DNA from: Mustelus asterias
Lineage: Eukaryota
DNA length: 64,000 bases
NCBI RefSeq assembly: GCF_964213995.1
Contig: NW_027590120.1
Span: 434,001 to 498,000 of the forward strand
Direction: 5' to 3'
Shown: positions 9,046-61,326 of the stretch, piece after piece
How positions within the stretch are numbered: the first letter of the stretch is position 1
How the letters are laid out: each line of letters begins with the position of its first letter
Notes under the pieces: generated by a model
Told to the model about the DNA's origin: nothing
Database searches by the model: none
Seen by the model: only the letters and a program-made list of their open reading frames with translations
Program-made: the position numbers and the translations under genes

Positions 9046-10365
9046 ATGGAGAAACTGTGCAAATGTGGGGACTGTGGGAAGGGATTCAGATACCCATCTG
9101 CACTGGAAATTCATCAACGCAGTCACACTGGGGAGAGGCCATTCACCTGCTCTGTGTGTGGGAAGGCATTCACTCATTCATCCCACCTGCGCAGACACAA
9201 TCTCACTCACACCAATGAGAAACCCTTTAAATGCACTGACTGTGGGAGCGGATTCAGAAGCTCTCAGGATCTGGTGTCCCACCAGCGCACTCACACTGAG
9301 GAGAGACCGTTCAGCTGCTCTCACTGCTCAAAGAGGTTTAAATGGTCATCCACCCTGCGGGTACACCAGCGAGTTCACACTGGGGAGAATCCATTCACCT
9401 GCTCGGTATGTGGAAAGGGATTCACTCTTTCATTCCACCTGCGCAGACACAATCTCACACACACCAATGAGAGACTGTTTAAATGCACTGACTGTGGGAG
9501 CGGATTCAAAAGCTCTGGGGAACTGATGTCCCACCAGCGCACTCACACTGAGGAGAGACCGTTCAGCTGCTCTCACTGCTCAAAGAGGTTTAGAACTTCA
9601 TCCACACTGCAGAGACACCAGCGACTTCACACCGGGGAGAGACCGTTCACCTGCTCTGTGTGTGGGAAGGGATTCACTCAGTTATCCATCCTACTGAAAC
9701 ACAATCTCACTCACACCAATGAGAGACCATTTAAATGCTCTGACTGTGGGAGTGGTTTCAAAAGCTCTGGAGATCTGGTGTCCCACCAGCGCATTCACAC
9801 TGAGGAGAGACCGTTCAGCTGCTCTCACTGCACAAAGAGGTTTAGAAAGCCATCCAGCCTGTGGGGACATCTGCGAATTCATACCGGGGAGAGACCATTC
9901 ACCTGCTCTGTGTGTGGAACAGGATTCACTCAGTTATCCCACCTGCGCAGACACAATCTCACTCATACTAATGAGAGACCGTTTAAATGCTCTGACTGTG
10001 GGAGCGGATTCAAAAGCTCTGGGGAACTGATGATCCACCAGCGCATTCACACTGAGGAGAGACCGTTCAGCTGCTCTCACTGCTCAAAGAGGTTTAGAAC
10101 TTCATCCAACCTGCGGAGACACCAGCGAGTTCACACTGAGGAGAGACCGTTCAGCTGCTCTCAATGCACAAAGAGGTTTAAAAGGTCATCCAACCTGTGG
10201 GAACATCAGCGAGTTCACACTGGGGAAAGACCATTCCCCTGCTGTGTGTGTGGGAAGGGATTCACTACTTCATCCAACCTGCTGACACACAAAGCCACTC
10301 ACTCCAAGGAGAGACCCTTTATTGCTCTGCCTGAGAGGCCGGCTTCAGAAGCTCTCAGGAACTGA
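9046..10365 (+). CDS. C2H2 zinc-finger protein 2 (15 fingers, no KRAB), with degenerate fingers on both sides
   Basis: ORF 9010-10365 with ATG at 9046 (MEKLCKCGDC). Decayed fingers at ~8810-9040 and 10366-10715. Acceptor ttacag at 8691-8696. Confidence 0.92.
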   Translation: MEKLCKCGDCGKGFRYPSALEIHQRSHTGERPFTCSVCGKAFTHSSHLRRHNLTHTNEKPFKCTDCGSGFRSSQDLVSHQRTHTEERPFSCSHCSKRFKWSSTLRVHQRVHTGENPFTCSVCGKGFTLSFHLRRHNLTHTNERLFKCTDCGSGFKSSGELMSHQRTHTEERPFSCSHCSKRFRTSSTLQRHQRLHTGERPFTCSVCGKGFTQLSILLKHNLTHTNERPFKCSDCGSGFKSSGDLVSHQRIHTEERPFSCSHCTKRFRKPSSLWGHLRIHTGERPFTCSVCGTGFTQLSHLRRHNLTHTNERPFKCSDCGSGFKSSGELMIHQRIHTEERPFSCSHCSKRFRTSSNLRRHQRVHTEERPFSCSQCTKRFKRSSNLWEHQRVHTGERPFPCCVCGKGFTTSSNLLTHKATHSKERPFIALPERPASEALRN

Positions 10366-16356: not shown

Positions 16357-17199
16357 TCACTTGTGAACTCGCTGGTGTCTCCGCAGGTGGGATGAAAGAC
16401 TGAATCTCTTCTCACACACAGAGCAGGTGAACGGCCTCTCCCCAGTGTGAACTCGCTGGTGTATCCGCAGACTGGATGAATCACAGAATCCCTTCCCACA
16501 CTGAGGGCAGGTGAACGGCCTCTCCCCAGTGTGAACACGATGGTGTTTGTGCAGGTGGGATGACTGAGTGAATCCCTTCCCACACTGAGAGCAGGTGAAT
16601 GGCCTCTCCCCAGTGTGGACTCGCTGGTGTTTCTGCAGGTCATGTGACCGAGTGAACCCCTTCCCACACTGAGAGCAGGTGAATGGCCTCTCCCCAGAAT
16701 GAATGTGCTCATGTGTCCGCAGGTCGGAAGGCCGAGTGAATCCCTTCCCACACTGAGAGCAGGTGAACGGCCTCTCCCCAGTGTGAACCCACTTGTGTGC
16801 CCGCAGGTTGGATGAACAAGCGAATCCCTTCCCACACTGAGGGCAGGTGAATGGCCTCTCCCCAGTGTGAACTCGCTGATGTGTGCGCAGGCTGGATAAA
16901 TAACTGAATCCCTCCCCACACTGAGAACACGTGAACGGTCTCTCCCCAGTGTGAACTCGCTGGTGTGTCTGCAGGCTGGATGACTGAGTGAATCCCTCCC
17001 CACACTGAGAGCAGGTGAATGGTCTCTCCCCAGTGTGAACTCGCTGGTGTGTCTGCAGGCTGGATGACTGAGTGAATCCCTCCCCACACTGAGAGCAGGT
17101 GAATGGTCTCTCCCCAGTGTGGCTGCGCCGATGAGCTTCCAGCTCTGATGGGGCTCTGGATCTCTTCCCACAGTCCCCACATTTCCATGGTTTCTCCAT
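16357..17199 (-). CDS. C2H2 zinc-finger protein 3 (10 fingers, no KRAB)
   Basis: ORF 16357-17235 with likely ATG at 17199 ([10 protein letters not shown]). Fingers 2 and 3 have identical amino-acid sequence. Decayed fingers upstream to ~17450. Confidence 0.92.
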
Positions 17200-20637: not shown

Positions 20638-20676
20638 AGTTTTTGTATGAGGCCCATGGGAGGCTCATGCACTGTG
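20638..20676 (-). other. 23-bp-spacer recombination signal sequence (CACAGTG-23-ACAAAAACT)
   Basis: cactgtg at 20670-20676, spacer 20647-20669 (23 nt) and agtttttgt at 20638-20646, immediately 3' of the YYCALRP codons. Confidence 0.95.
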
Positions 20677-20986
20677 GGTCTCAGTGCACAGTAATACACG
20701 GCGCTGTCTGGCATCTTCAAATCTTTCATTGACAAGTGAAAAGTGCTTTGTTTCTGGTTGAGGTTCCCGCTGAAATGTTCAAAGCCGGGAGCCGTCTCGT
20801 TAAACCCATAACTATCGGCTCTGAGCAGATACCGAGGAGCTCGATGTGTATACTGGCGATACCAGAACAGGTAATGTTGTACAGCTGAACTCGGTACCGA
20901 GTAACTGCAGGGTGTTGCTGAATCTTCACCCTCTGCTGCTTCAACTCCTGGTTCTGACTGGGACACTGAGTCTCCGTTACTCACGT
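20677..20986 (-). pseudogene. T-cell receptor alpha/delta-type V exon (open frame; leader and intron disrupted)
   Basis: DSVSQ...CSY...LFWYRQ...DSAVYYCALRP Ig V-set pattern, acceptor gcag at 20987-20990 and a 23-RSS. Confidence 0.88.
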
Positions 20987-20988
20987 CT

Positions 20989-21292
20989 GCCTTTGGCTAA
21001 GATCAAGTGTAGTATGGATCGCCTGCACTTGGTTGAGGTCATTAGGTTACGCTGAGGCTTCATATGTTTCATATGAAGCAATTTTTAAAAGCGGCATCTC
21101 GGCCTTTTGGCTAAGATGCAAATGAGCTCAAGTCTTGGAGGAGGAACCTCCCCCTTCTCCAATCAGCTTGACTCATGTAGATCAGGCCCAGGACAGGGGG
21201 GTTTTGGTCTCCCGTCCTGTCTTGTCAGCCTGGATCTGAAATGTCTCAACTTGTTGAGACTCTGAATTGGATTTGATTTGATTGAATTGGAA
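20989..21292 (+). mobile_element. U2 snRNA-headed SINE-like element, copy 1 (5'-truncated), antisense in the V intron
   Basis: U2 nt ~12-39 at 20989-21015 and a second U2 piece (nt 7-27) at 21097-21117. Aligns along its length with 28331-28649. Confidence 0.85.
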
Positions 21293-21432
21293 AAGTATAA
21301 AAAAAAAGAAAATATACAGCGGATACAAAGCGGGTTAGGAGACAGAGGAAGACAATAGTCACACAGAGCTGGGAAACGGAAATTGCACAAGGGTTGAAAT
21401 ATACTTTACAATATAAGATCAGAATCACTGAC

Positions 21433-21450
21433 CTGGGATCAGAGCAATAG
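21433..21450 (-). pseudogene. Probable 3' remnant of the TCR V leader exon (…IALIP-D) with donor GTCAGT
   Basis: ATT GCT CTG ATC CCA G|gtcagt joins in phase 1 to AC GTG AGT AAC GGA GAC of the V exon. The 5' part is replaced by a Penelope tail. Confidence 0.55.
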
Positions 21451-21777
21451 TAAGAAGTCTCACAACACCAGGTTAAAGTCCAACAGGTTTTTTTTTATTT
21501 CAAAAATATACTTTATTCACACAAAAAAAACTCTCCAATAAAACATTGCAAAATTACAGATCCAAAAGTCATAAACAGTGTAAAAAAGAATCATTTTTAC
21601 AGTACAATACCGTGCTCATTTACAAAAACATTACATTCCGTTACATTTCATTTCTTAAAACTATATACATGTGTCAGAGTTTACTGTGTGCCGTTGTTTT
21701 TCAGGTTGGCACACAGTTATGCAGGCCGAGAGTATTCTGCAGTTACCCGGCCCTCGGTCTGCCTCGGTTGAGACGCT

Positions 21778-24700
21778 TTACACGGTGGCCTTTCCCCATT
21801 GTGCCTTGGCGGCGGCTGCCCCAAGCTTGAGCGCGTCCCTGAGCACGTAGTCCTGGACCTTGGAATGTGCCAGTCTGCAACACTCGGTCGAGGACAATTC
21901 TTTCAGCTGGAAGATCAGCAAGTTTCGGGCGGACCAAAGTGCGTCCTTCACCGAGTTGATGACCCTCCAGCAGTAGTTGATATTTGTCTCGGTACGCGTC
22001 CCCGGAAACAGCCCGTAGAGCACAGAGTCCTGCGTCACCGAGCTGCTCGGGACGAACCGCGACAAATACCACTGCATCTCGTTCCAGACCTTCTTTGCAA
22101 AGGCACATTCCACAAGGAGGTGTGCGACCGTCTCATCAGCCCCGCAGCCGCTTCGAGGGCAGCGTGCGGTGAGGTTGAGACCCCGGGCATGCATAAAGGA
22201 TCTGACGGGGAGTGCCCTTCTCACCACCAGCCAAGCCAGGTCTTGGTGCTTGTTTGTGAGTTCTGGTGATGAGGCATTCTGCCAAATGACATTGACAGTC
22301 CGCTCAGGGAACCATCCGACAGGATCTGCCGTCTCCTTTTCTCTCAGGGCCTCAAGGACATTACGTGCTGACCACTGCTTGATAGCCATGTGGTCAAAGG
22401 TGTGTTTCCGGAAGAATTTCTCCACGAAGGACAGGTGCTGCGGTACGGTCCAACTACTTGGAGCGTTCCGCGGCAATGTGGCCAGACCCATCCTCCGCAA
22501 CACTTGGGACAGGTAGAACCTCAAAAAATAGTGGCACTTGCTGTTACTGTACCGAGGATCTACACACAGCTTGATGCAGCCGCACACAAAGGTGGCCATC
22601 AGGATGAGGGCGGCGTTGGGAACGTTTTTCCCTCCGTTCTCTGGAGATTTGTGCATCGCCTCCCTCCGGACACGATCCATCTTTGATCTCCAGATGAACT
22701 TGAAGATGGCCCGGGTCACTGCTGCTGCGCAGGACTTGGGGAGAGGCCACACCTGCGCCACGTACAACAACACGGACAGAACCTCGCATCGGATCACAAG
22801 GTTCTTCCCAGTAATGGAGAGGGAGCGTTGCTCCCACAATCCCAATTTTTGTTTGGCTTTGGCGATGCGCTCCTCCCAGTTTTTGGCGCATGCCCCTGCC
22901 GCTCCGAACCATATCCCCAGCACCTTGAGGTAGTCTACCCTAATGGTGAAAGGGACAAAGGATGTGTCAGGCCAGTTCCCAAAGAACATGGCCTCACTCT
23001 TACCCTGGTTGACTTTGGCTCCCGAGGCCAGCTCGAACTGCTCACAGACTCGAAGAAGCCTGCGAACAGACGAGGGGTCCGAGCAGAAAACAGCCACGTC
23101 ATCCATGTAGAGGGAGGCTTTGACTTGCGTCCCTCCGCTGCCTGGGATTGTAACCCCTTTGATGCCTGAGTCGCTTCTGAGGGCCTCGGCAAAGGGTTCA
23201 ATGCAACACACAAAAAGGACGGAGGAGAGAGGGCAGCCCTGCCTGACTCCAGACCTGATTTGAAACATATCTGATTCTCACCCATTGATTGAAACTGCGC
23301 TACTGATGTCTGTGTAGAGCAGTTGGATCCAATTGCAGATTCCCTCCCCAAATCCCATTTTGGACAGCACATCCATCATGTAGCTGTGCGATATTCTGTC
23401 AAACGCCTTCTCCTGGTCTAGACTGATGAGGCAGGTGTCCACCCGCCTGTCCTGCACGTAGGCGATCGTATCCCTGAGTAGCGCAAGGCTATCAGAGATC
23501 TTCCTGCCGGGTACAGCACAGGTTTGATCAGGATGGATTACTGACCCCAGAGCAGACTTGACCCGGTTGGCGATGACCTTGGCCAGAATCTTGTAATCCA
23601 CATTCAATAGTGAAATAGGTCTCCAATTTCTAATTTCTTCCCTTTCCCCCTTCTGCTTGTAGATGAGAGTAATGATGCCTTTCCTCATGGATTCTGACAT
23701 GCTGCCTTCCAGAAGCATACTCTCGTATACTTCCAGGAGGTCCGGGCCCGTCAAGTCCCACAACGCCGAGTAAAACTCAGCCGGTAAGCCGTCGCTACCG
23801 GGAGTTTTACCCTTCTGAAGGGACTCGACGGCCTTTGTCAGCTCATCCAGAGCTACCGGTCTGTCCAGGCTCTCCCGCTCGCCGTCGTCCATGACTTGCG
23901 TGATGGACGACAGGAAAGACTGGGAGGCCGTGCTGTCTGTTGGCTTCAGGTCATACAGTCCGGCATAGAAGGATTTGCAGATCCTCAGAATGTCAGACTG
24001 CGATGACCCTACAGAGCCATCTTCTTCCTTCAGGCTTGTGATCACAGAGGATTCTCTGTGCACCTTCTGGAAGAAGAAGCGCGAGCACGTTTCGTCCTGC
24101 TCCACGAAGTGGACCCAGGACCGGAAGATAACCTTGGAGGCCTCCGAGACAAAGAGCGAGGCTTGCTGGCTCTTCACCACCCGGAGGTCCTCCTTGACAT
24201 CCACCCCCATCGACTGCAGTTGGAGTAGCTCCTGCATGCTTTTCTGGAGTCGGGACATTTCCCCCCGTCTCTCCCTGGCCTTCTGAACCCCTTTTCGGAT
24301 GAAGAACCTCTTGATGTTGCCCTTGATGGTTTCCCACCAGAGCGATGGAGACTCAAAGAAGGGTTTCACGGTCCTCCAACCGTGGTAAACCCTCTTGAGT
24401 TCCTCGAGGTTCTCTGGGGTCAACAGTTCTACATTAAGCTTCCAGGACCCCCTGCCCACTTTCTGGTTTTGCTCCAGCTGACAGTCTGCCAGCAGGAGGC
24501 AGTGGTCAGAGAAGAACACCGGCTTGACGTCGGTGGACCTGACCGTGAGCGTGCGGGATGCAAACATGAAGTCGATCCTGGAGCGGACAGACCCGTCTGG
24601 CCGCGACCACGTGTATCTACGCTGCCCTCCGTCTGCTGGATTGCTGAAGACGTCGAGCAGCCTGGCATCTTTGACTGTTTCCAGCAGGGCTCTGGACGTA

Positions 24701-25186
24701 GCGTCCAGTTTACTTTCGGCCCTGTTGGATCGGCCGGCCTTGTCAATGATGCAGTTAAAGTCCCCACCCAGTATGATTGGCCTGGAGGTGGTGAGTAGCA
24801 GTGGCAGCTGTTCGAAGAGTGCCAGCCGCTCGGTCTTGATGGCAGGGGCATACACATTGATCAGCCTGAGAGGGCAGTTTTTGTACGTGACATCTGCTAC
24901 GAGGAGGCGTCCTCCCACCACCTCCTTAACTTCGGAGACGGTGAAGTTGCCCCCCCCGCAGCAGAATGCCTAGGCCTGATGAACGGCAGTCGTTCCCACC
25001 TGACCAGATGGACGGTCCGTGGGACCACACACTCGACCAGCGCCTGTAGTTGCTGAGGTGTGGTATTCCACACTCCTGCAGGAACAGCAGGTCGGCCTTG
25101 ATCTTGGCCAGGTAGGACAAGCTGGCCGCACATCTCAGGCTGTCTTTAACACTGCGAACATTTAAGGATGCAAACTTTAAAGACAT
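21778..25186 (-). pseudogene. Tx1 ORF2 (endonuclease-reverse transcriptase), one frameshift and one in-frame stop
   Basis: MSLKFASLNVRS...LQE, GGDFN, SRIDF, SDH, WRPISLLN, QGCPLS, YMDD, CPRSGC...H...C. Frameshift in the G-run at ~24950; TGA at 23278-23280 followed by in-frame continuation. Confidence 0.93.
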
Positions 25187-25224
25187 TTTAATGTTTAAGA
25201 GGTTTGTCAGTTCTTACGTGTCCT

Positions 25225-26617
25225 TCAGTCAGCCTCCTCCAGGTGCTGCATTCCTGTGGCGCTGACGAAATTCTGCAGGGCTGCAGGGCTGAGGTAGCAG
25301 TCCGACCCTGCCTCAGGTCCCCGACCACGACTGGGTGACATGGTCGGTGTCGTGTAGCCCTCGGTTGGTGCCGGGCTTGCGGGCCGATCTCCGCCTTGGG
25401 CGTTGTCGGTGTCCTCGTTCCTGTTGTCCGGGGTTTCGGGGGCCTCGGCCGCACTGCTGCATCCGTCGGCTGGATGGTCCCCGGCTGCTTTGTGGTCATT
25501 GGTCCGAGTCCATTGTGGTTCCCGTGCCGCTTTCCTAATGCACCGTTTGAGGCTTTGTCGGCTGCCCGCTTTCTTTTCCTCGTCTGAGGAGACGTCGCCC
25601 CTGGAGACCCTGGCTGCGCAGGATTTCCTTTTCTGGGTGCTTTTCTTCTTCTTTACCACCTGCCAGGGGCCCTCGGGATCTCCGTTCTCCTGCTCCATGT
25701 CCTCTGCGCCCTCTGCTGGTGGTGGTGTGGATGTGTCATCATCCTGCTGCACTGGGGGGGGGGGGGGGGGGGGGCACCTTTGCTTCAGAAGCTTTCTCCG
25801 TGCCAGGATCTTTTGCGGTGGGCTTCTTGTTCCCTGAGGCGGCAGGAGCACTCGCCTTCCTCGCTCCGCCTCCGGTGATCTGGGCGTAAGTGACCTTCCG
25901 CTTGGGGCAGACTCTGTAAACGCGGCCAGTCTCCCCACACAGGGTGCAACATTTGCTGTCTTTGCACTCGTCGGTCGAGTGCCCCTCCTTCAGGCAGTTT
26001 CTGCATACGGTGACACTGCAGCTCGCGGCAAAATGGCCGGTTTTGCCACAGTTGCGGCACAGTCGTGGCTGGCCCGTGTAGTACAGGAAGCCTCGATTCC
26101 CTCCGATGGTAAAATTGGAGGGCGGGTGCAGAAGGCCTCCCTTGGGGTCAGTCTTCAGGGTGACTCTCACCTACCTTTTACAGGTCCATATTCCATACTG
26201 GTCCATGACGTCCACGCTCTCTCCCTTCACCTCCACGTACCGGGAGAGGAACGTCAGCACGTCAGCCGCAGGGACGTAGTGGTTATACATTTGGAATGTG
26301 ATAACCCGGTTCCGCTGGGACGGCATGGTGAACAGGGGCTCCGCCGTCAGGATAGAGAGGGGCTCCTCTTTGCCTTTCTCCTTCACCGCTGTCAGGAGCT
26401 TGACGCATCCTGACAGGCTTCTGAAGCTGACATCCACATGTGGCGGCTTGCTGTACTCAGCCACACCATAGATGTCTGCTGCTTGGAATCCGCAGCACTC
26501 GAACAATACCTTCTTCACGAGGTAATCGCGGCCCAGAGGCGAGCCTCCTCCCGAAGGCTTCACCCGGATGGTGTTGGGCTGCCTTTGGCCTGTAGCTTTC
26601 AGAGCAGCTGCAGCCAT
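25225..26617 (-). pseudogene. Tx1 ORF1 (ZCCHC3-like zinc-knuckle protein), one in-frame TAG and a homopolymer frameshift
   Basis: CRNCGKTGHFAASC, CRNCLKEGHSTDEC, CTLCGETGRVYRVC. TAG at 26171-26173; frameshift in the homopolymer at ~25754-25774. Confidence 0.88.
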
Positions 26618-26819
26618 AGCTCGAAAACACTGAGTCTTACTGTACCGGCGTTAGGTCCAAGCCAGAGGCTTGAAACCAGCATAAAGGTCCACCAGTAGCA
26701 GCAGAGCTCAAGTGTTGCAGACGGTCGTCTGCCGGTCGTCTGACGCCTGCTTCTTCAATCCACAATCCCCATCGAAACTCGATAGCTCCTTGCGAAATCC
26801 GAGCCCTTGGCTTTGATCA

Positions 26820-26854
26820 TACACTTGATCTTAGCCAAAAGGCCGAGAAGCGAT
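26820..26854 (-). ncRNA. U2 snRNA 5' fragment (nt 1-35) as the 5' end of the Tx1 element; not a U2 gene
   Basis: Reverse complement reads ATCGCTTCTCGGCCTTTTGGCTAAGATCAAGTGTA, matching the vertebrate U2 5' end. No U2 3' part is present. Confidence 0.95.
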
Positions 26855-27719: not shown

Positions 27720-28330
27720 AATATTCAGGCTTAACCTGATAAATGGCAAGTAATGTTTCACTGCACAAGTGCCAGGCAAGGACCATCTCCAACAGAAAGG
27801 AATCTAACCATATTCCCTTTACTTTGAATGGCAGCACCATTGCTGAATCCTTAACCATCAACATCCTGGCTGGTGGGGGCACACTGGGACCATTGGCCAG
27901 ACACGGAACTGTAAACGCTACGGCTCCAAGAGTTGGTCAGAGTCTGTGAATTCAGATGAGCAATTTGCTTCCTGTTTCTCAAATGCTTGTCCTCCATCTA
28001 CAAGGCACAAATCAGCAGTATGATGGAATCCACTCATCTTGATGGAATGAGTGCAGCTTCAAAAACACTCAAGAAACTCATCCATGACAAAGGAGCCACT
28101 GGATCAGCAGGCCGTTTACCAAATTAAACATTGACTCCACCACTGACACACAGTGGCAGCATTGTGTACCACATACAAGGTGGACTGTAGCAACTCACCA
28201 GGGCTCCTGAGACAGCATCTTCCAAACACGTACTACCTATCACCTAGATGGGCAAAGATATCAGATGAATGGAACAACAACGACCTTCAGATTCCCTTCC
28301 GAGCCAGACACCATCCTGACTTGGAATATA
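27720..28330 (+). mobile_element. Degraded LINE 3' region (CR1/L2 superfamily), host of the second U2-SINE
   Basis: aagtgccaggcaaggaccatctccaaca and catctacaaggcacaa motifs, ending caccatcctgacttggaa; the repeat resumes after 28650. Confidence 0.55.
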
Positions 28331-28649
28331 TTCGCTTCTCGGCCTTTTGGCTAAGATCAAGTGTAGTATGGATTGGATGCTGCACTTGGCTGAGGTCATT
28401 ATGTTACACTGAAGCTTCATATGTTTCATATCAAGCAATTTTTAATAGCGGCACCTCGGCCTTTTGGCTAAGATGCAAATGAGCTCAAGTCTTGGAGGAG
28501 GTGTTGCTTTGCTCCTCCAATCAGCTTGCCTCATGTAGATCAGGCCCAGGACAGGGTGGTTTGGTCGCTCGCCCTGTCTTGTCAGCCTGGATCTGAAATG
28601 TCTCAACTTGTTGAGACTTTGAATTGGATTTGATTTGATTGAATTGGAA
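28331..28649 (+). mobile_element. U2 snRNA-headed SINE-like element, copy 2 (near full length)
   Basis: U2 nt 2-39 at 28332-28369, second U2 piece (nt 8-27) at 28455-28474. Candidate TSD ttggaatat at 28321-28329 and 28644-28652. Confidence 0.88.
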
Positions 28650-28799
28650 TATTGCTTTTGCATCAGTGCTGTGGGATCAAATCCTGGACATCTCTTCCTA
28701 ACGGCATTGTACCAGATGGCTGCAGATTTTAAGAAGTTGATTCACCACCACCTTCTCTAGGGCAATTGGGGATGGGCTACAAGTCCTCGCATTGCCAAT

Positions 28800-39436: not shown

Positions 39437-40136
39437 AGTCTGGGTTCACTCTGACCGTTGAGATTCAGTGTCTCAGGCCTGGTTGTGTTCACTCTGTCCT
39501 TTCAGATTCAGTGTCTCAGACCTGGCTGGGTTCCCACTGTCCTTTGAGATTCAATGTCTCAGGCCTGGTTGGGTTCACTGTGTCCTTTCAGATTCCGTGT
39601 CTCAGGGTTGGCTGGGTTCACTTTGTCCTTTGAGATTCAGTGTCACAGGCCTGGCTAGGTTCACTCTGTCCTTTGAGATACAGTGTCTCAGGCCTGGTTG
39701 GGTTCACTGTGTCCTTTCAGATTCAGTGTCTCAGGGCTGGCTGGGTTCACTTTGTCCTTTCAGATTCAGTGTCTCAGGGTTGGCTGGGTTAACTTTGTCC
39801 TTTGAGATTCAATGTCTCAGGGCTGGCTGGGTTCACTTTGTTCTTTCAGATTCAATGTCTCAGGGCTGGTTGGGTTCACTGTGTCCTTTCAGATTCAGTG
39901 TCTCAGGGCTGGCTGGGTTCACTTTGTCCTTTGAGATTCCGTGTCTCAGGCCTGGTTGGGTTCACTGTGTCCTTTCAGATTCAGTGTCTCAGGCCTGGTT
40001 GGGTTCACTTTGTCCTTTCAGATTCAGTGTCTCAGGCCTGGCTGGGTTCACGCTGTCCTTTGAGATTCAGTGTCTCAGGCATGGTTGGGTTCGCTGTGTC
40101 CTTTAAGATTCACTGTCACAGGCCTGGCTGGATGTG
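39437..40136 (-). repeat. 43-bp satellite block (~16 units), inverted relative to the block at 52.8-61.3 kb
   Basis: Unit ggttcactgtgtcctttgagattcagtgtctcaggcctggctg. Confidence 0.93.
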
Positions 40137-52785: not shown

Positions 52786-53392
52786 CACATCCAGGCCTGT
52801 GACACTGAATCTCAAATAAAAGTTTGAACACAGCCAGGCCTGTGACACTGAATCTCAAAATACACATTGAACCCAGCCAGGCCGAAGAGCTTGAATCTCA
52901 AAAGACAGAGTGAATCCAGCTAAGACTGTGACACTGAATCTCAAAAGACTGAATGAACCCAGCCAGGTCTGAGACACTGAAACTCAAAGAACAGAGTGAA
53001 CACAGCCAGGCCTCTGACACTGAATCTCAAAGGACAGAGTGAAGCCAGCCAGGCCTGTGACACAGAATATCAAATGTCAGAGTGAACCCCGTGAGGCCTG
53101 AGCCACTGAATCTCAAGGGACAGAGTGAATCTAGCCAGGCCTGTGGCACTCAATCTCAAATAGCAGTGGGAACACAGCCGGGCCTGTGACACTGAAGCTC
53201 AAAGGACAGAATGTATCCAGCCAGGTCTGTGACACTGAATATGAAAGGACACAGTGATTCCAACCAGGCCTGTGACACTGAATCTCAAAGGACGCAGTGT
53301 ATCCAGCCGGGCCTGTGACACCCAAACTGAAAGGATACACTGATCCCAACCAGGCCTGTGACACTGAATCGGAAAGAACAGAGTGAACGCAG
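52786..53392 (+). repeat. 43-bp satellite, left of the Gypsy insertion
   Basis: Unit cagccaggcctgtgacactgaatctcaaaggacagagtgaacc. Confidence 0.93.
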
Positions 53393-58120: not shown

Positions 58121-61100
58121 CGCAGCCAGACCTGTGACATTGAATCTGAAAGGACACAGTGAACCTAGGCAGGCCTGTGACACTGGATCTCAAATAACAG
58201 TTCGAACCCAGCCAGTCCTGTGACATTGAATATGAAAGGATGGGGTGGATCCAGCCGGGCCTGTGACACTGAATCGCAAATAACAGTTCGAACACATCCA
58301 GGACTGTTTCACTGAATCTCAAAAGGACAGAGTGAACACAGCCAGGTCTGTGACCCCAAATTTCAAAGGACACAGTGAACCCAGCCAGGCCTGTGACACT
58401 GAATCTCAAAGGACACAGTGTATCCAGGCAGGCCTGTGACACCCAAACTGAAAGTATACACTGATCCCAACCAGGCCTGTGACCCTGAATCTGAAAGTAC
58501 AGAGTGAGCAGAGCCAGGCCTGTGACACTGAATCTCAAAGGACACAATGTATCCAGCCAGGTCTGTGACTCTGTATATGAAAGGGTACAGTGATCCCAAC
58601 CAGGCCTGTGACACTGAAGCTCAAAGGAATGAGTGAACCTAGCCAGGCCTGAGACCTTAAATCTCAAATAGCAGTTCTAACACAGCCAGGCCTGTGAAAC
58701 TGAATATTAAATGACAGAGTGAACCCAGTGACGCCTGAGACACTGAATCTCAAGGGACAGAGGGAATCTAGCCAGGCTTGTAGCACTAAATTGCAAATAG
58801 CAGTGCGAACACAGCCCGGCCTGTGACACTGAAGCTCAAAGGACATAGTGTATCCAACCAGCCCTGTGACACTCGAACTGAAAGGATACACTGATACCAA
58901 CCAGGCCTGTGACACTGAATCGGAAAGAACAGAGTGAACGCAACCAGGCCTGTGACACTGAATCGGAAAGAACAGAGTGAACGCAACCAGGCCTGTGACA
59001 CTGAATCTGAAAGGACAGATTGAACCAAGCCAGGTCTGTGACCCCAAATTTCAAAGGACACAGTGAACCCAGCCAGGCCTGTGACTCTGAATCTCAAAGG
59101 ACAGAGTCAATCAGCCAGGCCTGTGACACTGAATCTCAATGGGCAGAGTGAACCAGCCAGGCATTTGACACTGAATCAAACCAGGACTGTGACACTGAAT
59201 CTGAAAGGAAAGAGTGAACTCAGCCAGGCCGATAACACTCAAACTGAAAGGACAGAGTGAACCCAGGCAGGCCCGTGACACTGAATCTCAAATAACAGTT
59301 TGAAAACCGCTAGGCCTGTGACACTGAATCTCAAATAACAGTTTGAAAACCGCTAGGCCTGTGACACTGAATCTCAAGTAACAGTTTGAAAACCGCTAGG
59401 CCTGTGACACTGAATCTCAAATAACAGTTTGAAAACCGCTAGGCCTGTGACACTGAATTTCAAAGTACAGAGGACCCCGGCCAGGCCTGAGACCTCAAAT
59501 CTCAAATAACAGTTCGAACACAACCAGGCCTATGACACTGAAGCTCAAAGGACAGATTGAACCCAGCCATGCCTGTGACACTGAATATGAAGGGACACAT
59601 GTATCCAGCCAGGTCTGTGACACTGAATCTCAAAGGACAGAGTGAATCCAACCAGGCCTGTGACACTGAATCTCAAAGGAAACTGTGTATCCTGCCAGCC
59701 CTGTGACACTCAAACTGAAAGGATACACTGATCCCAACCAGGCCTGTGACACTGAATCTGAAAGAACAGAGTGATCACAGCCAGGCCTGTGACATTGAAT
59801 CTGAAAGGACACAGTGAACCTAGGCAGGCCTGTGACACTGAATCTCAAATAACAGTTCAAACCAGCCAGTCCTGGGACATTGAATATGAAAGGAGAGAGT
59901 GGATCCAGCCAGGCCTGTTTCACTGAATCTCAAAGGACAGAGCGAACCCAGCCAAGCCTGTGACACTGAATCTCAAAAGACACAGTGAACCAAGCCAGGC
60001 CTGTGACACTGAATCTCAAATCACAGTGAATCCAGCCAGGTCTGTGACACTCAAATTGAAAGGATACACTGATCACAACCAGGCCTGTGACACTGAATCG
60101 GAAAGAACAGAGTGAACGCAGCCATGCCTGTGACATTGAATCTCAAAAGACAGAGTGAACCCAGCCAGGCCTGTGACACTGAATTTCAAAGGACACAGTT
60201 TATCCAGTCGGGCCTGTGACACTGAATCTGAAAGGACAGAGTGACCTCGGCCAGGCCGGAGACCTTAAATCTCAAAGGACAGAGTGAACACAGTCAGGCC
60301 TGTGACACTGAATCTGAAAGGAATGAGTGAACCCTGCCTGTCCGGAGACCTTAAATCTCAAATAACAGTTCGAACACAGCCAGGCCTGTGACACTGAATC
60401 TCAAAGGACAGAGTGAACCCCATGAGGCCTGAGACACTGAATTTCAAAGGACAGAGTGAAGCCAGAAAGGCCTGTGATACTGAATCTGAAAGGACAGAGT
60501 GAATCCAGCCGGGTCTGTGACACAAAATCTCAAATAGCAGTTCGAACACAGCCAGGCCTGTGACACTGAATCTCAAATGACAGAGTGAACCCAGTGACGC
60601 CTGAGACACTGAATCTCAAGGGACAGAGTGAATCTAGCCAGGCCTGTGGCACTAAATCTCAAATAGCAGTGCGAACACAGTCGGGCCTGTGAAACTGAAT
60701 CTCAAAGGACACAGTGTATCCAGCCTGGTCTGTGACACTGAATATGAAGGGACACAGTGATTCCAACCAGGCCTGTGACACTGAATCTCAATGGACACAG
60801 TGTATCCAGCCAGGCCTGTGGCACCCAAACTGAAAGGATACAGTGATCCCAACCAGGCCTGTGACACTGAATCTGAAAGTACAGAGTAAGCAGAGCCAAG
60901 CCTGTGACACCGAATCTCATAGCACACAGTGAATCCAGCCAGGCCTGTGACACTGCACCTCAAAGGACACAATGTATCCAGCCAGGTCTGTGACACTGAA
61001 TATGAAAGGGTACACTGATCCCAACCAGGCCTGTGAAACTGAATCTCAAGGGACAGAATGAATCCTGCCAAGCATGTGACACTGAATCTCAAAAGACACA

Positions 61101-61326
61101 GTGAACCAAGTCAGGCCTGTGACACTGAATCTGAAAGGAAACAGTGTATCCTGCCAGCCCTGTGACACTCAAACTGAAAGGATACACTGATCCCAACCAG
61201 GCCTGTGACACTGAATCGGAAAGAACAGAGTGAACGCAGCCAGGCCTGTGACATTGAATCTGAAAGGACACAGTGAACCATGTCAGGCCTGTGACACTGA
61301 ATCTCAAAGGACAGAATGAATCCAGG
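58121..61326 (+). repeat. 43-bp satellite with higher-order variants
   Basis: Continuation of the array after the LTR; four near-identical variant units at ~59279-59450. Confidence 0.95.

What the first reader, a model, noticed from the sequence alone, without database searches (positions are those of the whole stretch)
28331..28649. Dimeric U2-headed SINE-like RNA with conserved stems and variable loops
Seen layout: U2(1-39), antisense arm, hairpin gcttcatatg/catatgaagc, AATTTTTAA, U2(7/8-27), long hairpin (atgag..tcaag..ttggaggag / ctcctccaa..cttg..ctcat), hairpin agatcaggc/gcctggatct enclosing gacagg/cctgtc, palindrome gtctcaac-tt-gttgagac, then an (ATTTG)-like tail. The two copies lie in unrelated hosts (a TCR intron and a LINE tail) and differ mostly in loops (aacctccc versus gtgttgctttg). 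Inference: this is a mobile structured RNA under selection. The second U2 piece may be a fossil target duplication from serial insertion into a U2 gene.
Basis: partly seen in the sequence, partly recalled or inferred. Interest (0 to 1): 0.85.

Follow-up and report, generated by a model that had tools for sequence, protein, structure and literature searches.

The report
U2-headed SINE family in a shark
This is a roughly 320-base mobile DNA element whose front end is copied from the U2 spliceosomal RNA, a shark counterpart of the SINEU retroposons known from crocodilians, and it looks like a genomic parasite and not a working RNA gene.

Summary
The layout is real. Copy 1 (28331-28649) starts with U2 snRNA nt 1-39 and holds a second U2 piece (nt 8-27). 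It also has a chain of hairpins (body fold z -4.0; -6.7 in copy 2) and a TTTGA-repeat tail. A 5'-truncated copy, about 90% alike, lies at 20992-21292. A 9-bp direct repeat flanks copy 1.

The best reading is a SINEU-type non-autonomous retroposon (Kojima 2015, crocodilians), here in an elasmobranch. The head ends where Keno and Utopia LINEs cut U2 genes (nt 38/39). An L1/Tx1-like LINE in the same window (26853-21488, minus strand) also starts with U2 nt 1-35. I infer that the head comes from co-transcription with a U2 gene; this is not shown.

Selection on structure is not shown. None of 92 predicted pairs changed on both sides. Outside one loop block, differences fall in stems about as often as the stems' share predicts.

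First readers of this scan noted the same family elsewhere in this genome (31 notes). No paper in the library links SINEU with sharks.

Verdict: new member of a known kind, moderate interest.

The parts
28321..28329 (+). 5' copy of the 9-bp direct repeat (candidate target-site duplication)
   Evidence: Read. It is identical to 28644-28652. Six of the nine letters also end copy 2, so part of the repeat may be the element's own 3' end or microhomology.
28331..28369 (+). U2 snRNA-derived head (model positions 1-39: stem-loop I and the branch-point recognition sequence)
   Evidence: Rfam RF00004 alignment. After this stretch was not sent to any tool.
28381..28397 (+). Arm complementary to U2 stem-loop I letters
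   Evidence: In the two-copy consensus fold it forms 17 pairs with 28458-28477, the internal U2 piece and its edges. Pairing with the head was judged by eye only.
28414..28436 (+). Hairpin, perfect in copy 2, one mismatch in copy 1
   Evidence: alignment column 55, C versus G.
28437..28445 (+). AATTTTTAA: a T5 run. It would stop RNA polymerase III and resembles an Sm site.
   Evidence: Rfam aligned it to the U2 Sm-site region. Identical in copy 2.
28455..28474 (+). Internal U2 piece (U2 nt 8-27), taken as an older, eroded head
   Evidence: 20/20 identity to the head. Identical in copy 2.
28479..28534 (+). Long hairpin whose loop differs as a block between the copies
   Evidence: Without the head it gives no U2 hit in Rfam.
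28536..28595 (+). Long hairpin (outer stem plus inner stem)
   Evidence: Only a chance-level mir-26 match (17.4 bits against a gathering score of 57).
28600..28617 (+). 7-bp hairpin just before the tail
   Evidence: Identical in both copies.
28618..28649 (+). Tail of TTTGA-like repeats ending in GAATTGGAA; no poly(A) in copy 1
   Evidence: period 5, 4.4 copies. The 23-nt tail motif occurs only in the two copies, against 0 expected in shuffles.
28644..28652 (+). 3' copy of the 9-bp direct repeat
20992..21292 (+). Copy 2 of the family: 5'-truncated within the head, followed by an A-rich stretch, abutting a V-set exon on the other strand
21488..26853 (-). L1/Tx1-like LINE whose 5' end is U2 nt 1-35. 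It has ORF1 (RNA-binding domains plus CCHC), ORF2 (endonuclease, reverse transcriptase, zf-RVT), an AATAAA signal and an A tail.

Best explanation
The element is a copy of a SINEU-type family: a short, non-coding retroposon copied into new sites by the reverse transcriptase of a LINE.

Shown here:
- Its first 39 bases are the 5' end of U2 snRNA.
- A second, shorter U2 piece lies inside it.
- The rest folds into a chain of hairpins and ends in a short-repeat tail.
- A second, 5'-truncated copy lies 7 kb away.
- Copy 1 is flanked by a 9-bp direct repeat.
- An L1/Tx1-like LINE in the same window starts with the same U2 piece.

Inferred:
- The head is the stretch of a U2 gene that lies upstream of the site (between nt 38 and 39) where U2-targeting LINEs (Keno, Utopia) insert.
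- A founder copy sitting in a U2 gene was transcribed by RNA polymerase II from the U2 promoter as a U2(1-38)-element chimera, and that RNA was then copied elsewhere.
- A repeat of this cycle left the older internal U2 piece.
- Copies outside U2 genes, like the two here, have no promoter of their own and are probably dead on arrival.
- The 3' hairpin and repeat tail are the part the partner LINE recognises. Which LINE that is remains open.
For: - U2 head: Rfam hit of 50.8 bits with positions 1-39 matched.
- Internal U2 piece: 20/20 identity to the head.
- Copies: two copies with the same complex layout, 90.5% identical over 305 columns, in unrelated flanks, one 5'-truncated. A profile of the body finds only these two in the window.
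- Direct repeat: 9 bp at both ends of copy 1.
- No coding capacity: the only ORF of 80 aa or more that reaches the element starts in the 5' flank and ends within the element.
- Pol III: the T5 and T4 runs inside argue against polymerase III, as Kojima argued for SINEU (PMC4494074, section 18).
- LINE with a U2 head: U2 nt 1-35 at 26853. It carries endonuclease, RT, zf-RVT, and an ORF1 with RNA-binding domains and CCHC. Its best solved relative is human L1 ORF2p at E 9.8e-48. Relatives are at 66-83% identity in sharks and rays and at 42-45% in amphibians.
- SINEU literature (PMC4494074, sections 9 and 18): SINEU has U1/U2 heads and recurrent 5' addition of U2 pieces. Tx1 LINEs there carry the same U2 head, and the Tx1-Mar group clusters with Keno.
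- Cut site: PMC4640811 section 6 says U2 downstream of Utopia starts at nt 39 and that the site is the same for Keno. A PMC6136364 passage gives Keno's 3' target sequence, which begins at that base.
- Family size (leads only): 31 first-reader notes of U2-headed SINE-like elements elsewhere in this genome. Sampled 31-letter words of the element are held by runs of three coded organisms at shares of 0.24-0.52.
Against: - Only two copies could be studied.
- Copy 1 has no poly(A) tail, whereas Kojima states that all SINEU groups have one.
- The LINE in the window ends in poly(A) and shares nothing with the element beyond the U2 head, so it is not shown to be the partner.
- Six of the nine direct-repeat letters may belong to the element's own 3' end.
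- Copy 2 shows no direct repeat.
- Kojima favoured template switching to U2 snRNA, not co-transcription, for the origin of the heads.
- No U2 gene carrying the element was seen, and the LINE's own U2 head ends at nt 35, not 38.
- No run on record as RNA holds the element.
- The LINE's clade (Tx1/Keno) was not tested by phylogeny.
Confidence: 0.75

Rival explanations
1. Same kind of element, but the U2 pieces were added by template switching. At the end of reverse transcription the LINE enzyme jumped from the 5' end of the element's RNA onto a U2 snRNA, as proposed for SINEU and for U6-L1 chimeras.
For: This is the mechanism Kojima prefers for SINEU heads and 5' extensions (PMC4494074, section 18, read in full). 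The head of the LINE here ends at nt 35 and that of the SINE at nt 39, so the junction is not strictly fixed.
Against: An end-to-end jump onto mature U2 should copy it from its 3' end. That would put the whole snRNA, or its 3' part, next to the element. Here only nt 1-35/39 are present. Both junctions lie within 4 nt of the Keno/Utopia cut site (PMC4640811 section 6; PMC6136364 passage). This is inference, not a test.
Confidence: 0.3
2. It is not a SINE in the strict sense but an internally deleted, non-autonomous derivative of a U2-targeting (Keno-like) LINE. It would keep that LINE's U2 leader, the start of its 5' UTR with the fold-back arm, and its 3' UTR.
For: The LINE in the window also has a U2 leader followed at once by a stretch partly complementary to it. 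The SINE has the same arrangement.
Against: No similarity between the element's body and this LINE beyond the U2 letters. The tails differ: repeat tail against poly(A). No other LINE with that tail is in the window.
Confidence: 0.25
3. It is a family of host RNA genes, a structured non-coding RNA or variant U2, kept by selection on its stems.
For: The body folds much better than shuffles (z -3.98 and -6.67). The six one-sided changes within predicted pairs all keep pairing through G-U. One hairpin keeps its stem while its loop is replaced as a block.
Against: None of 92 pairs changed on both sides. The consensus fold leaves out pairs that break, so 6 of 6 kept is partly circular. On single-sequence folds, 9 (copy 1 fold) or 11 (copy 2 fold) of the 17 differences outside the loop block lie in paired positions. 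Paired positions make up 69-71%, so there is no depletion, and each copy has stem-breaking changes. Copies are 5'-truncated, inserted in other repeats, and lack a U2-type 3' half (no U2 hit in 28373-28451 or 28477-28649). No run on record as RNA holds it.
Confidence: 0.05
4. It is a decayed U2 snRNA gene or retropseudogene, as an Rfam-based annotation would call it.
For: It passes Rfam's gathering score for U2 (50.8 against 46), with the alignment stretched over model positions 1-192.
Against: The score rests on the first 39 positions. Both parts of the body searched alone give no U2 match at E up to 10. Copy 2, which lacks the start of the head, is not called. The element extends 116 bases beyond the U2 alignment and is repeated with that extension.
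Confidence: 0.03

Closest known systems
SINEU (SINEU-1/2/3 of crocodilians; Kojima 2015, PMC4494074)
   Same: Both are short non-coding retroposons under 500 bp with a 5' head from the 5' end of U2 (or U1) snRNA. Both carry more than one U2 piece, from repeated 5' addition, and have oligo-T runs that exclude polymerase III. In both, L1/Tx1-type LINEs in the same genome carry the same U2 head.
   Different: The host differs: an elasmobranch, whereas in 2015 none was found outside crocodilians. This element has a repeat tail after a hairpin, not poly(A). No preferred target was established here. Sequence relatedness to crocodilian SINEU could not be tested because no consensus is at hand, and an independent origin is likely. 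The head boundary at the Keno/Utopia site is not discussed in that paper.
Keno (Tx1 clade) and Utopia, LINEs that insert into U2 snRNA genes (PMC4640811; PMC6136364)
   Same: The U2 piece carried by the element (nt 1-38/39) and by the LINE here (nt 1-35) is what lies upstream of their shared insertion site.
   Different: Those are autonomous, site-specific elements found inside U2 genes. The copies here lie outside U2 genes, and the SINE encodes nothing. Whether the LINE here belongs to the Keno lineage was not tested.
snRNA-LINE/Alu chimeric retrocopies made by template switching (Buzdin 2002 and Garcia-Perez 2007, as cited in PMC4494074)
   Same: An snRNA sequence is joined to the 5' end of a retrotransposed sequence.
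   Different: Those are one-off products. Here the same composite recurs as a family with shared internal structure, and only the first 35-39 nt of U2 are present.
Known elasmobranch SINEs (HE1 V-SINE, SacSINE1 DeuSINE, SINE2-1_CM; table passage in PMC3747384)
   Same: Same host group. They have LINE-derived 3' tails of the hairpin-plus-repeat type; this last point is my recollection of how CR1/L2-type tails are usually described, not taken from that passage.
   Different: All listed ones have tRNA-derived heads and polymerase III promoters. This one has a U2 head.

Membership tests
SINEU | 5' head derived from the U1 or U2 snRNA gene | tested here: met
   Rfam U2 model positions 1-39 are matched at 28331-28369.
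SINEU | Short (under 500 bp) and non-coding | tested here: met
   About 320 bp between the direct repeats. No ORF of its own: the 109-aa ORF starts in the flank and the 73-aa antisense ORF has its ATG in the flank.
SINEU | Dispersed repeat family whose copies share one composite structure, and so are not independent chimeras | tested here: met
   Two copies in the window have the same layout and are 90.5% identical. A larger family size rests on unverified first-reader notes and shared words in runs.
SINEU | Hallmarks of LINE-mediated insertion (target-site duplication, 5' truncation) | tested here: inconclusive
   A 9-bp direct repeat flanks copy 1, but six of its letters may be the element's own end. 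Copy 2 is 5'-truncated and shows no repeat.
SINEU | 3' poly(A) tail (stated for all SINEU groups in PMC4494074) | tested here: not met
   Copy 1 ends in TTTGA-like repeats and GAATTGGAA with no A run. Copy 2 is followed by an A-rich stretch that may or may not be a tail.
SINEU | Mobilised by Tx1-clade LINEs that share head or target preference | tested here: inconclusive
   An L1-superfamily LINE with a U2 head lies in the window. It shares no tail with the element, and neither clade nor target preference was tested.
U2 snRNA gene | Full U2 architecture (stem-loops II-IV, Sm site) beyond the 5' end | tested here: not met
   No U2 match at E up to 10 in 28373-28451 or 28477-28649. Non-standard pairs are marked in the aligned stem-loop III region.
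Non-autonomous derivative of Keno/Utopia | Located in a U2 gene at nt 38/39, with U2 nt 39 onward downstream | tested here: not met
   For these two copies the downstream flanks are not U2, and Rfam finds no other U2 in the window. Master copies elsewhere could not be searched.
Structured RNA under selection | Compensatory (two-sided) changes that keep stems | tested here: not met
   0 of 92 predicted pairs. With two sequences the test has very little power.

The most novel reading that the evidence does not exclude
The family, and the U2-headed LINE beside it, live on the snRNA gene system. Master copies sit in U2 genes at the Keno site and are transcribed by polymerase II from the U2 promoter as capped U2(1-38)-led RNAs. 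Two features are adaptations that let the chimera use, or at least not poison, the snRNP pathway. One is the arm that follows the head and folds back on U2 stem-loop I and the branch-point recognition sequence. The other is the Sm-like AAUUUUUAA between hairpins. If so, this would answer the open question of how SINEU elements are transcribed, and it would be an snRNA-promoter-driven class of retroposon shared by sharks and crocodilians.
Probability: 0.25. Interest if true: 0.7.

Novelty: new member of a known kind. Interest (0 to 1): 0.45.

Why it matters
- SINEs with snRNA heads are so far described only from crocodilians. A family in elasmobranchs widens the class to the base of jawed vertebrates.
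- The shark copies here differ by only about 6-10%. They may therefore be young enough to find master copies.
- The head boundary at the Keno/Utopia cut site gives a concrete, testable answer to the question Kojima left open: how SINEU is transcribed.
- There is a practical consequence. A full-length copy passes Rfam's gathering score for U2 (50.8 against 46). Infernal-based annotation of shark genomes is therefore likely to report such copies as U2 genes.
- One copy lies directly against a T-cell-receptor-like V exon. This may matter for that gene segment.

Tried and rejected
Searches for more copies, all without result:
- Two exact-pattern scans of metagenome contigs with invariant body motifs found 0 loci.
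- A protein search with the 57-aa antisense reading frame of the body found no candidate.
- A profile of the body found only the two known copies in the window, plus U2-letter matches.
- The flanks of copy 1 have no paralogue in the window that could serve as an empty site.

Rejected readings:
- Full-length U2 derivative: searches give no U2 signal outside the U2 letters.
- microRNA precursor: mir-26 at 17.4 bits against a gathering score of 57.
- True dimer: no internal repeat beyond 20 nt.
- The LINE at 26853-21488 as donor of the tail: no similarity.

The apparent enrichment of differences in unpaired columns of the RNAalifold consensus was 25 of 94 unpaired against 6 of 184 paired, Fisher p 2e-8. 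I reject it as evidence for three reasons. The consensus fold drops pairs that break. Five of the columns were an end gap. Nine belong to one loop block. The single-sequence folds show no depletion.

Literature:
- No paper in the library holds both 'SINEU' and 'shark' in a relevant sense. There was 1 hit, a crab microplastics paper.
- 23 papers hold 'SINEU' as a whole word and 21 were listed. From titles and abstract starts, none concerns cartilaginous fish.
- 5 papers hold 'U2 snRNA', 'SINE' and 'shark'; none is relevant by title.
- Repbase and Dfam could not be consulted.
- I did not ask for supplementary files, and figures are not held. Fig. 1B and the supplements of PMC4494074, and S1 Fig of PMC4640811, may show exact head lengths and junctions that bear on the cut-site argument.

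What I saw of each paper:
- PMC4494074: outline, sections 9 (both parts) and 18, and passages.
- PMC4640811: passages and section 6.
- PMC5786205, PMC6136364 and PMC3747384: passages only.
- All others: search listings only.

Full report
**Observation.** Rfam's U2 model is the only family in the 64-kb window that reaches its gathering score. It matches 28331-28533 at 50.8 bits against 46. In the alignment, model positions 1-39 match 28331-28369 almost letter for letter. That stretch covers stem-loop I and the branch-point recognition sequence. The rest of the model is stretched over the body with many non-standard pairs. A local BLAST of the element against the window gave three results: a second copy at 20992-21292 (90.5% over 305 columns), an exact 20-letter repeat of the head inside the element at 28455-28474 (U2 nt 8-27), and a 34-letter exact match to the head on the minus strand at 26853-26820. 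The tail is a period-5 TTTGA run. The last 23 letters occur only in the two copies, with 0 expected in shuffles.

**Boundaries.** The two copies align from within the head to GAATTGGAA and are unrelated beyond that on both sides. Copy 2 lacks about the first 15 head positions, so it is 5'-truncated. Copy 1 is flanked by an exact 9-bp direct repeat at 28321-28329 and 28644-28652. A repeat of that length at both edges would be rare by chance, of the order of 1 in 10,000 when a few offsets are allowed; this is my estimate, not a computation. Six of its letters also end copy 2. Part of the repeat may therefore be the element's own 3' end, with the target chosen or primed by microhomology. No paralogous empty site exists in the window. 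Copy 2 abuts, on the other strand, an ORF with an immunoglobulin V-set domain (PF07686, E 1.8e-12) that ends in a T-cell-receptor-like YYCA motif. I did not find a leader exon, so 'intron' is unverified. By my reading, the host of copy 1 is the decayed C-terminal region and 3' UTR of another LINE. No tool tested this.

**Structure.** The body beside the head folds far better than shuffles:
- Copy 1: -100.4 kcal/mol, z -3.98.
- Copy 2: -111.9 kcal/mol, z -6.67.
- In each case 0 of 200 shuffles did as well.

In the consensus fold, the arm at 28381-28397 forms 17 pairs with the internal U2 piece and its edges. By eye it can also pair with the head, but I could not compute that.

**Is the structure under selection?** The two-copy alignment has 273 columns, of which 26 differ.
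- RNAalifold predicts 92 pairs. None changed on both sides, and 6 changed on one side, all to or from G-U.
- Nine of the 26 differing columns are one block in the loop of the first long hairpin.
- Of the other 17, 9 lie in paired positions of copy 1's own fold and 11 in those of copy 2's fold. Paired positions make up 69% and 71% of each fold, so stems are not spared.
- Both copies carry stem-breaking changes. For example, column 55 breaks the short hairpin in copy 1 and column 152 opens a pair in the long hairpin.
- A first count on the consensus fold looked striking, but it is circular and I reject it.

The element is therefore truly structured, but two copies give no evidence of selection on that structure. 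The loop block with a retained stem is a hint that needs many copies to test.

**What is U2-like and what is not.** Searched alone, 28373-28451 and 28477-28649 give no U2 match at E up to 10. Copy 2, with its shortened head, is not called as U2. U2 ancestry is therefore shown only for the head and the internal 20-nt piece. The AATTTTTAA at 28437-28445 was aligned by Rfam to the Sm-site region and is conserved in copy 2, but that is a resemblance only. The T5 run and the T4 runs would stop polymerase III.

**The LINE.** On the minus strand from 26853 to 21488 lies a LINE whose first 35 bases are U2 nt 1-35.
- ORF1 pieces carry ZCCHC3-type RNA-binding domains and a CCHC knuckle.
- ORF2 pieces carry endonuclease, reverse transcriptase and zf-RVT domains.
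- It ends with AATAAA and an A run.
- Its best solved relative is human L1 ORF2p, E 9.8e-48.
- Of the 8000 candidates scored, 103 proteins reached E 1e-20 or better.
- The closest named ones are from sharks and rays: Cetorhinus 81%, Scyliorhinus 83%, Heptranchias 81%, Hemiscyllium 78%, Heterodontus 76%, Mobula 66-68%.
- Amphibian proteins follow at 42-45%.

That fits the Tx1 branch of the L1 clade, but I ran no tree. Beyond the U2 letters this LINE shares nothing with the SINE.

**Known relatives.** Kojima (PMC4494074; sections 9 and 18 read) described SINEU in crocodilians. These are short retroposons with U1 or U2 heads and recurrent 5' addition of U2 pieces. They have oligo-T runs that exclude polymerase III. 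Their Tx1 LINEs carry the same U2 head, and their Tx1 group clusters with Keno, the Tx1-clade LINE that targets U2 genes. At that time none was found outside crocodilians, and all had poly(A). Kojima and Jurka (PMC4640811, section 6) state that U2 downstream of Utopia insertions starts at nt 39, so that nt 1-38 are expected upstream, and that Keno uses the same site. A passage of PMC6136364 gives Keno's 3' target sequence, which begins at that base. The SINE head here ends at nt 38/39 and the LINE head at nt 35.

**Mechanism.** The following are shown: a composite, repeated, non-coding element with a U2 5' leader; a LINE with the same leader; 5' truncation; and a flanking repeat. I infer the rest.
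- The leader is the upstream half of a U2 gene split at the Keno/Utopia site.
- It was acquired when a founder in a U2 gene was transcribed from the U2 promoter.
- A second round left the internal piece.
- Dispersed copies lack a promoter.

Template switching, which Kojima prefers, is the main rival for this step. I give it less weight because only the first 35-39 nt of U2 are present and both junctions sit at the known cut site. The hairpin-plus-repeat tail without poly(A) looks like the recognition module of a stringent-type LINE. That classification is from my own recollection of the field, as I recall described for the eel LINE UnaL2, and comes from no call. The partner may therefore not be the poly(A) LINE seen here.

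**Distribution.**
- Twenty runs were listed for the element. Two hold half of the 29 sampled words or more, both from organism A.
- Runs of organisms A, B and C hold shares of 0.24-0.52. The rest hold 0.14 or less, which may be the U2 letters alone.
- None is on record as RNA.
- First readers of this scan noted U2-headed SINE-like elements in 31 notes elsewhere in this genome. Among them are tandem copies at one site, an empty paralogous site, and three copies in 30 kb. They also noted the LINE-SINE pair on this window. These notes are unverified leads.

**Limits.** The metagenome scans and a peptide search were blank. Copy number, subfamilies, covariation, target preference, master copies, and the partner LINE therefore remain untested.

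**Verdict.** The finding is real, and it is a mobile element. It is a new member of the SINEU kind in a new host group, with a testable link to the U2-targeting LINEs. The claim of selection on structure is unsupported so far.

Noticed in passing
window 21488-26853 (minus strand): A near full-length L1/Tx1-like LINE whose 5' end is U2 snRNA nt 1-35. The stretch that follows at once is partly complementary to that leader. ORF1 and ORF2 are each broken into pieces.
   Followed up: partly
window 20676-20984 (minus strand): A V-set exon with a T-cell-receptor-like YYCA end. The antisense SINE copy 2 starts 8 bases upstream of the ORF, so the insertion may have displaced the leader exon or intron of this V segment.
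   Followed up: partly
window 28331-28533: A SINE copy passes Rfam's gathering score for U2 (50.8 against 46). Infernal-based annotation is likely to over-count U2 genes in this genome.
   Followed up: partly
window 21293-21318: An A-rich stretch directly after copy 2. It could be a decayed poly(A) tail, which copy 1 lacks.
   Followed up: no
window 9123-10290 and 16362-17121: Arrays with an 84-bp period (252-bp super-period in the first), as expected of C2H2 zinc-finger repeats, on opposite strands.
   Followed up: no
window 39440-40131, 52791-53392, 58123-61325: A 43-bp satellite in three blocks, the first in the opposite orientation to the other two. The largest block has about 75 units.
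   Followed up: no
window 21319-21487: Between copy 2 and the LINE's A tail lies a short stretch that I recognise, from recall only, as the end of a common shark SINE-like repeat. The SINE, this repeat and the LINE form a nest of insertions.
   Followed up: no
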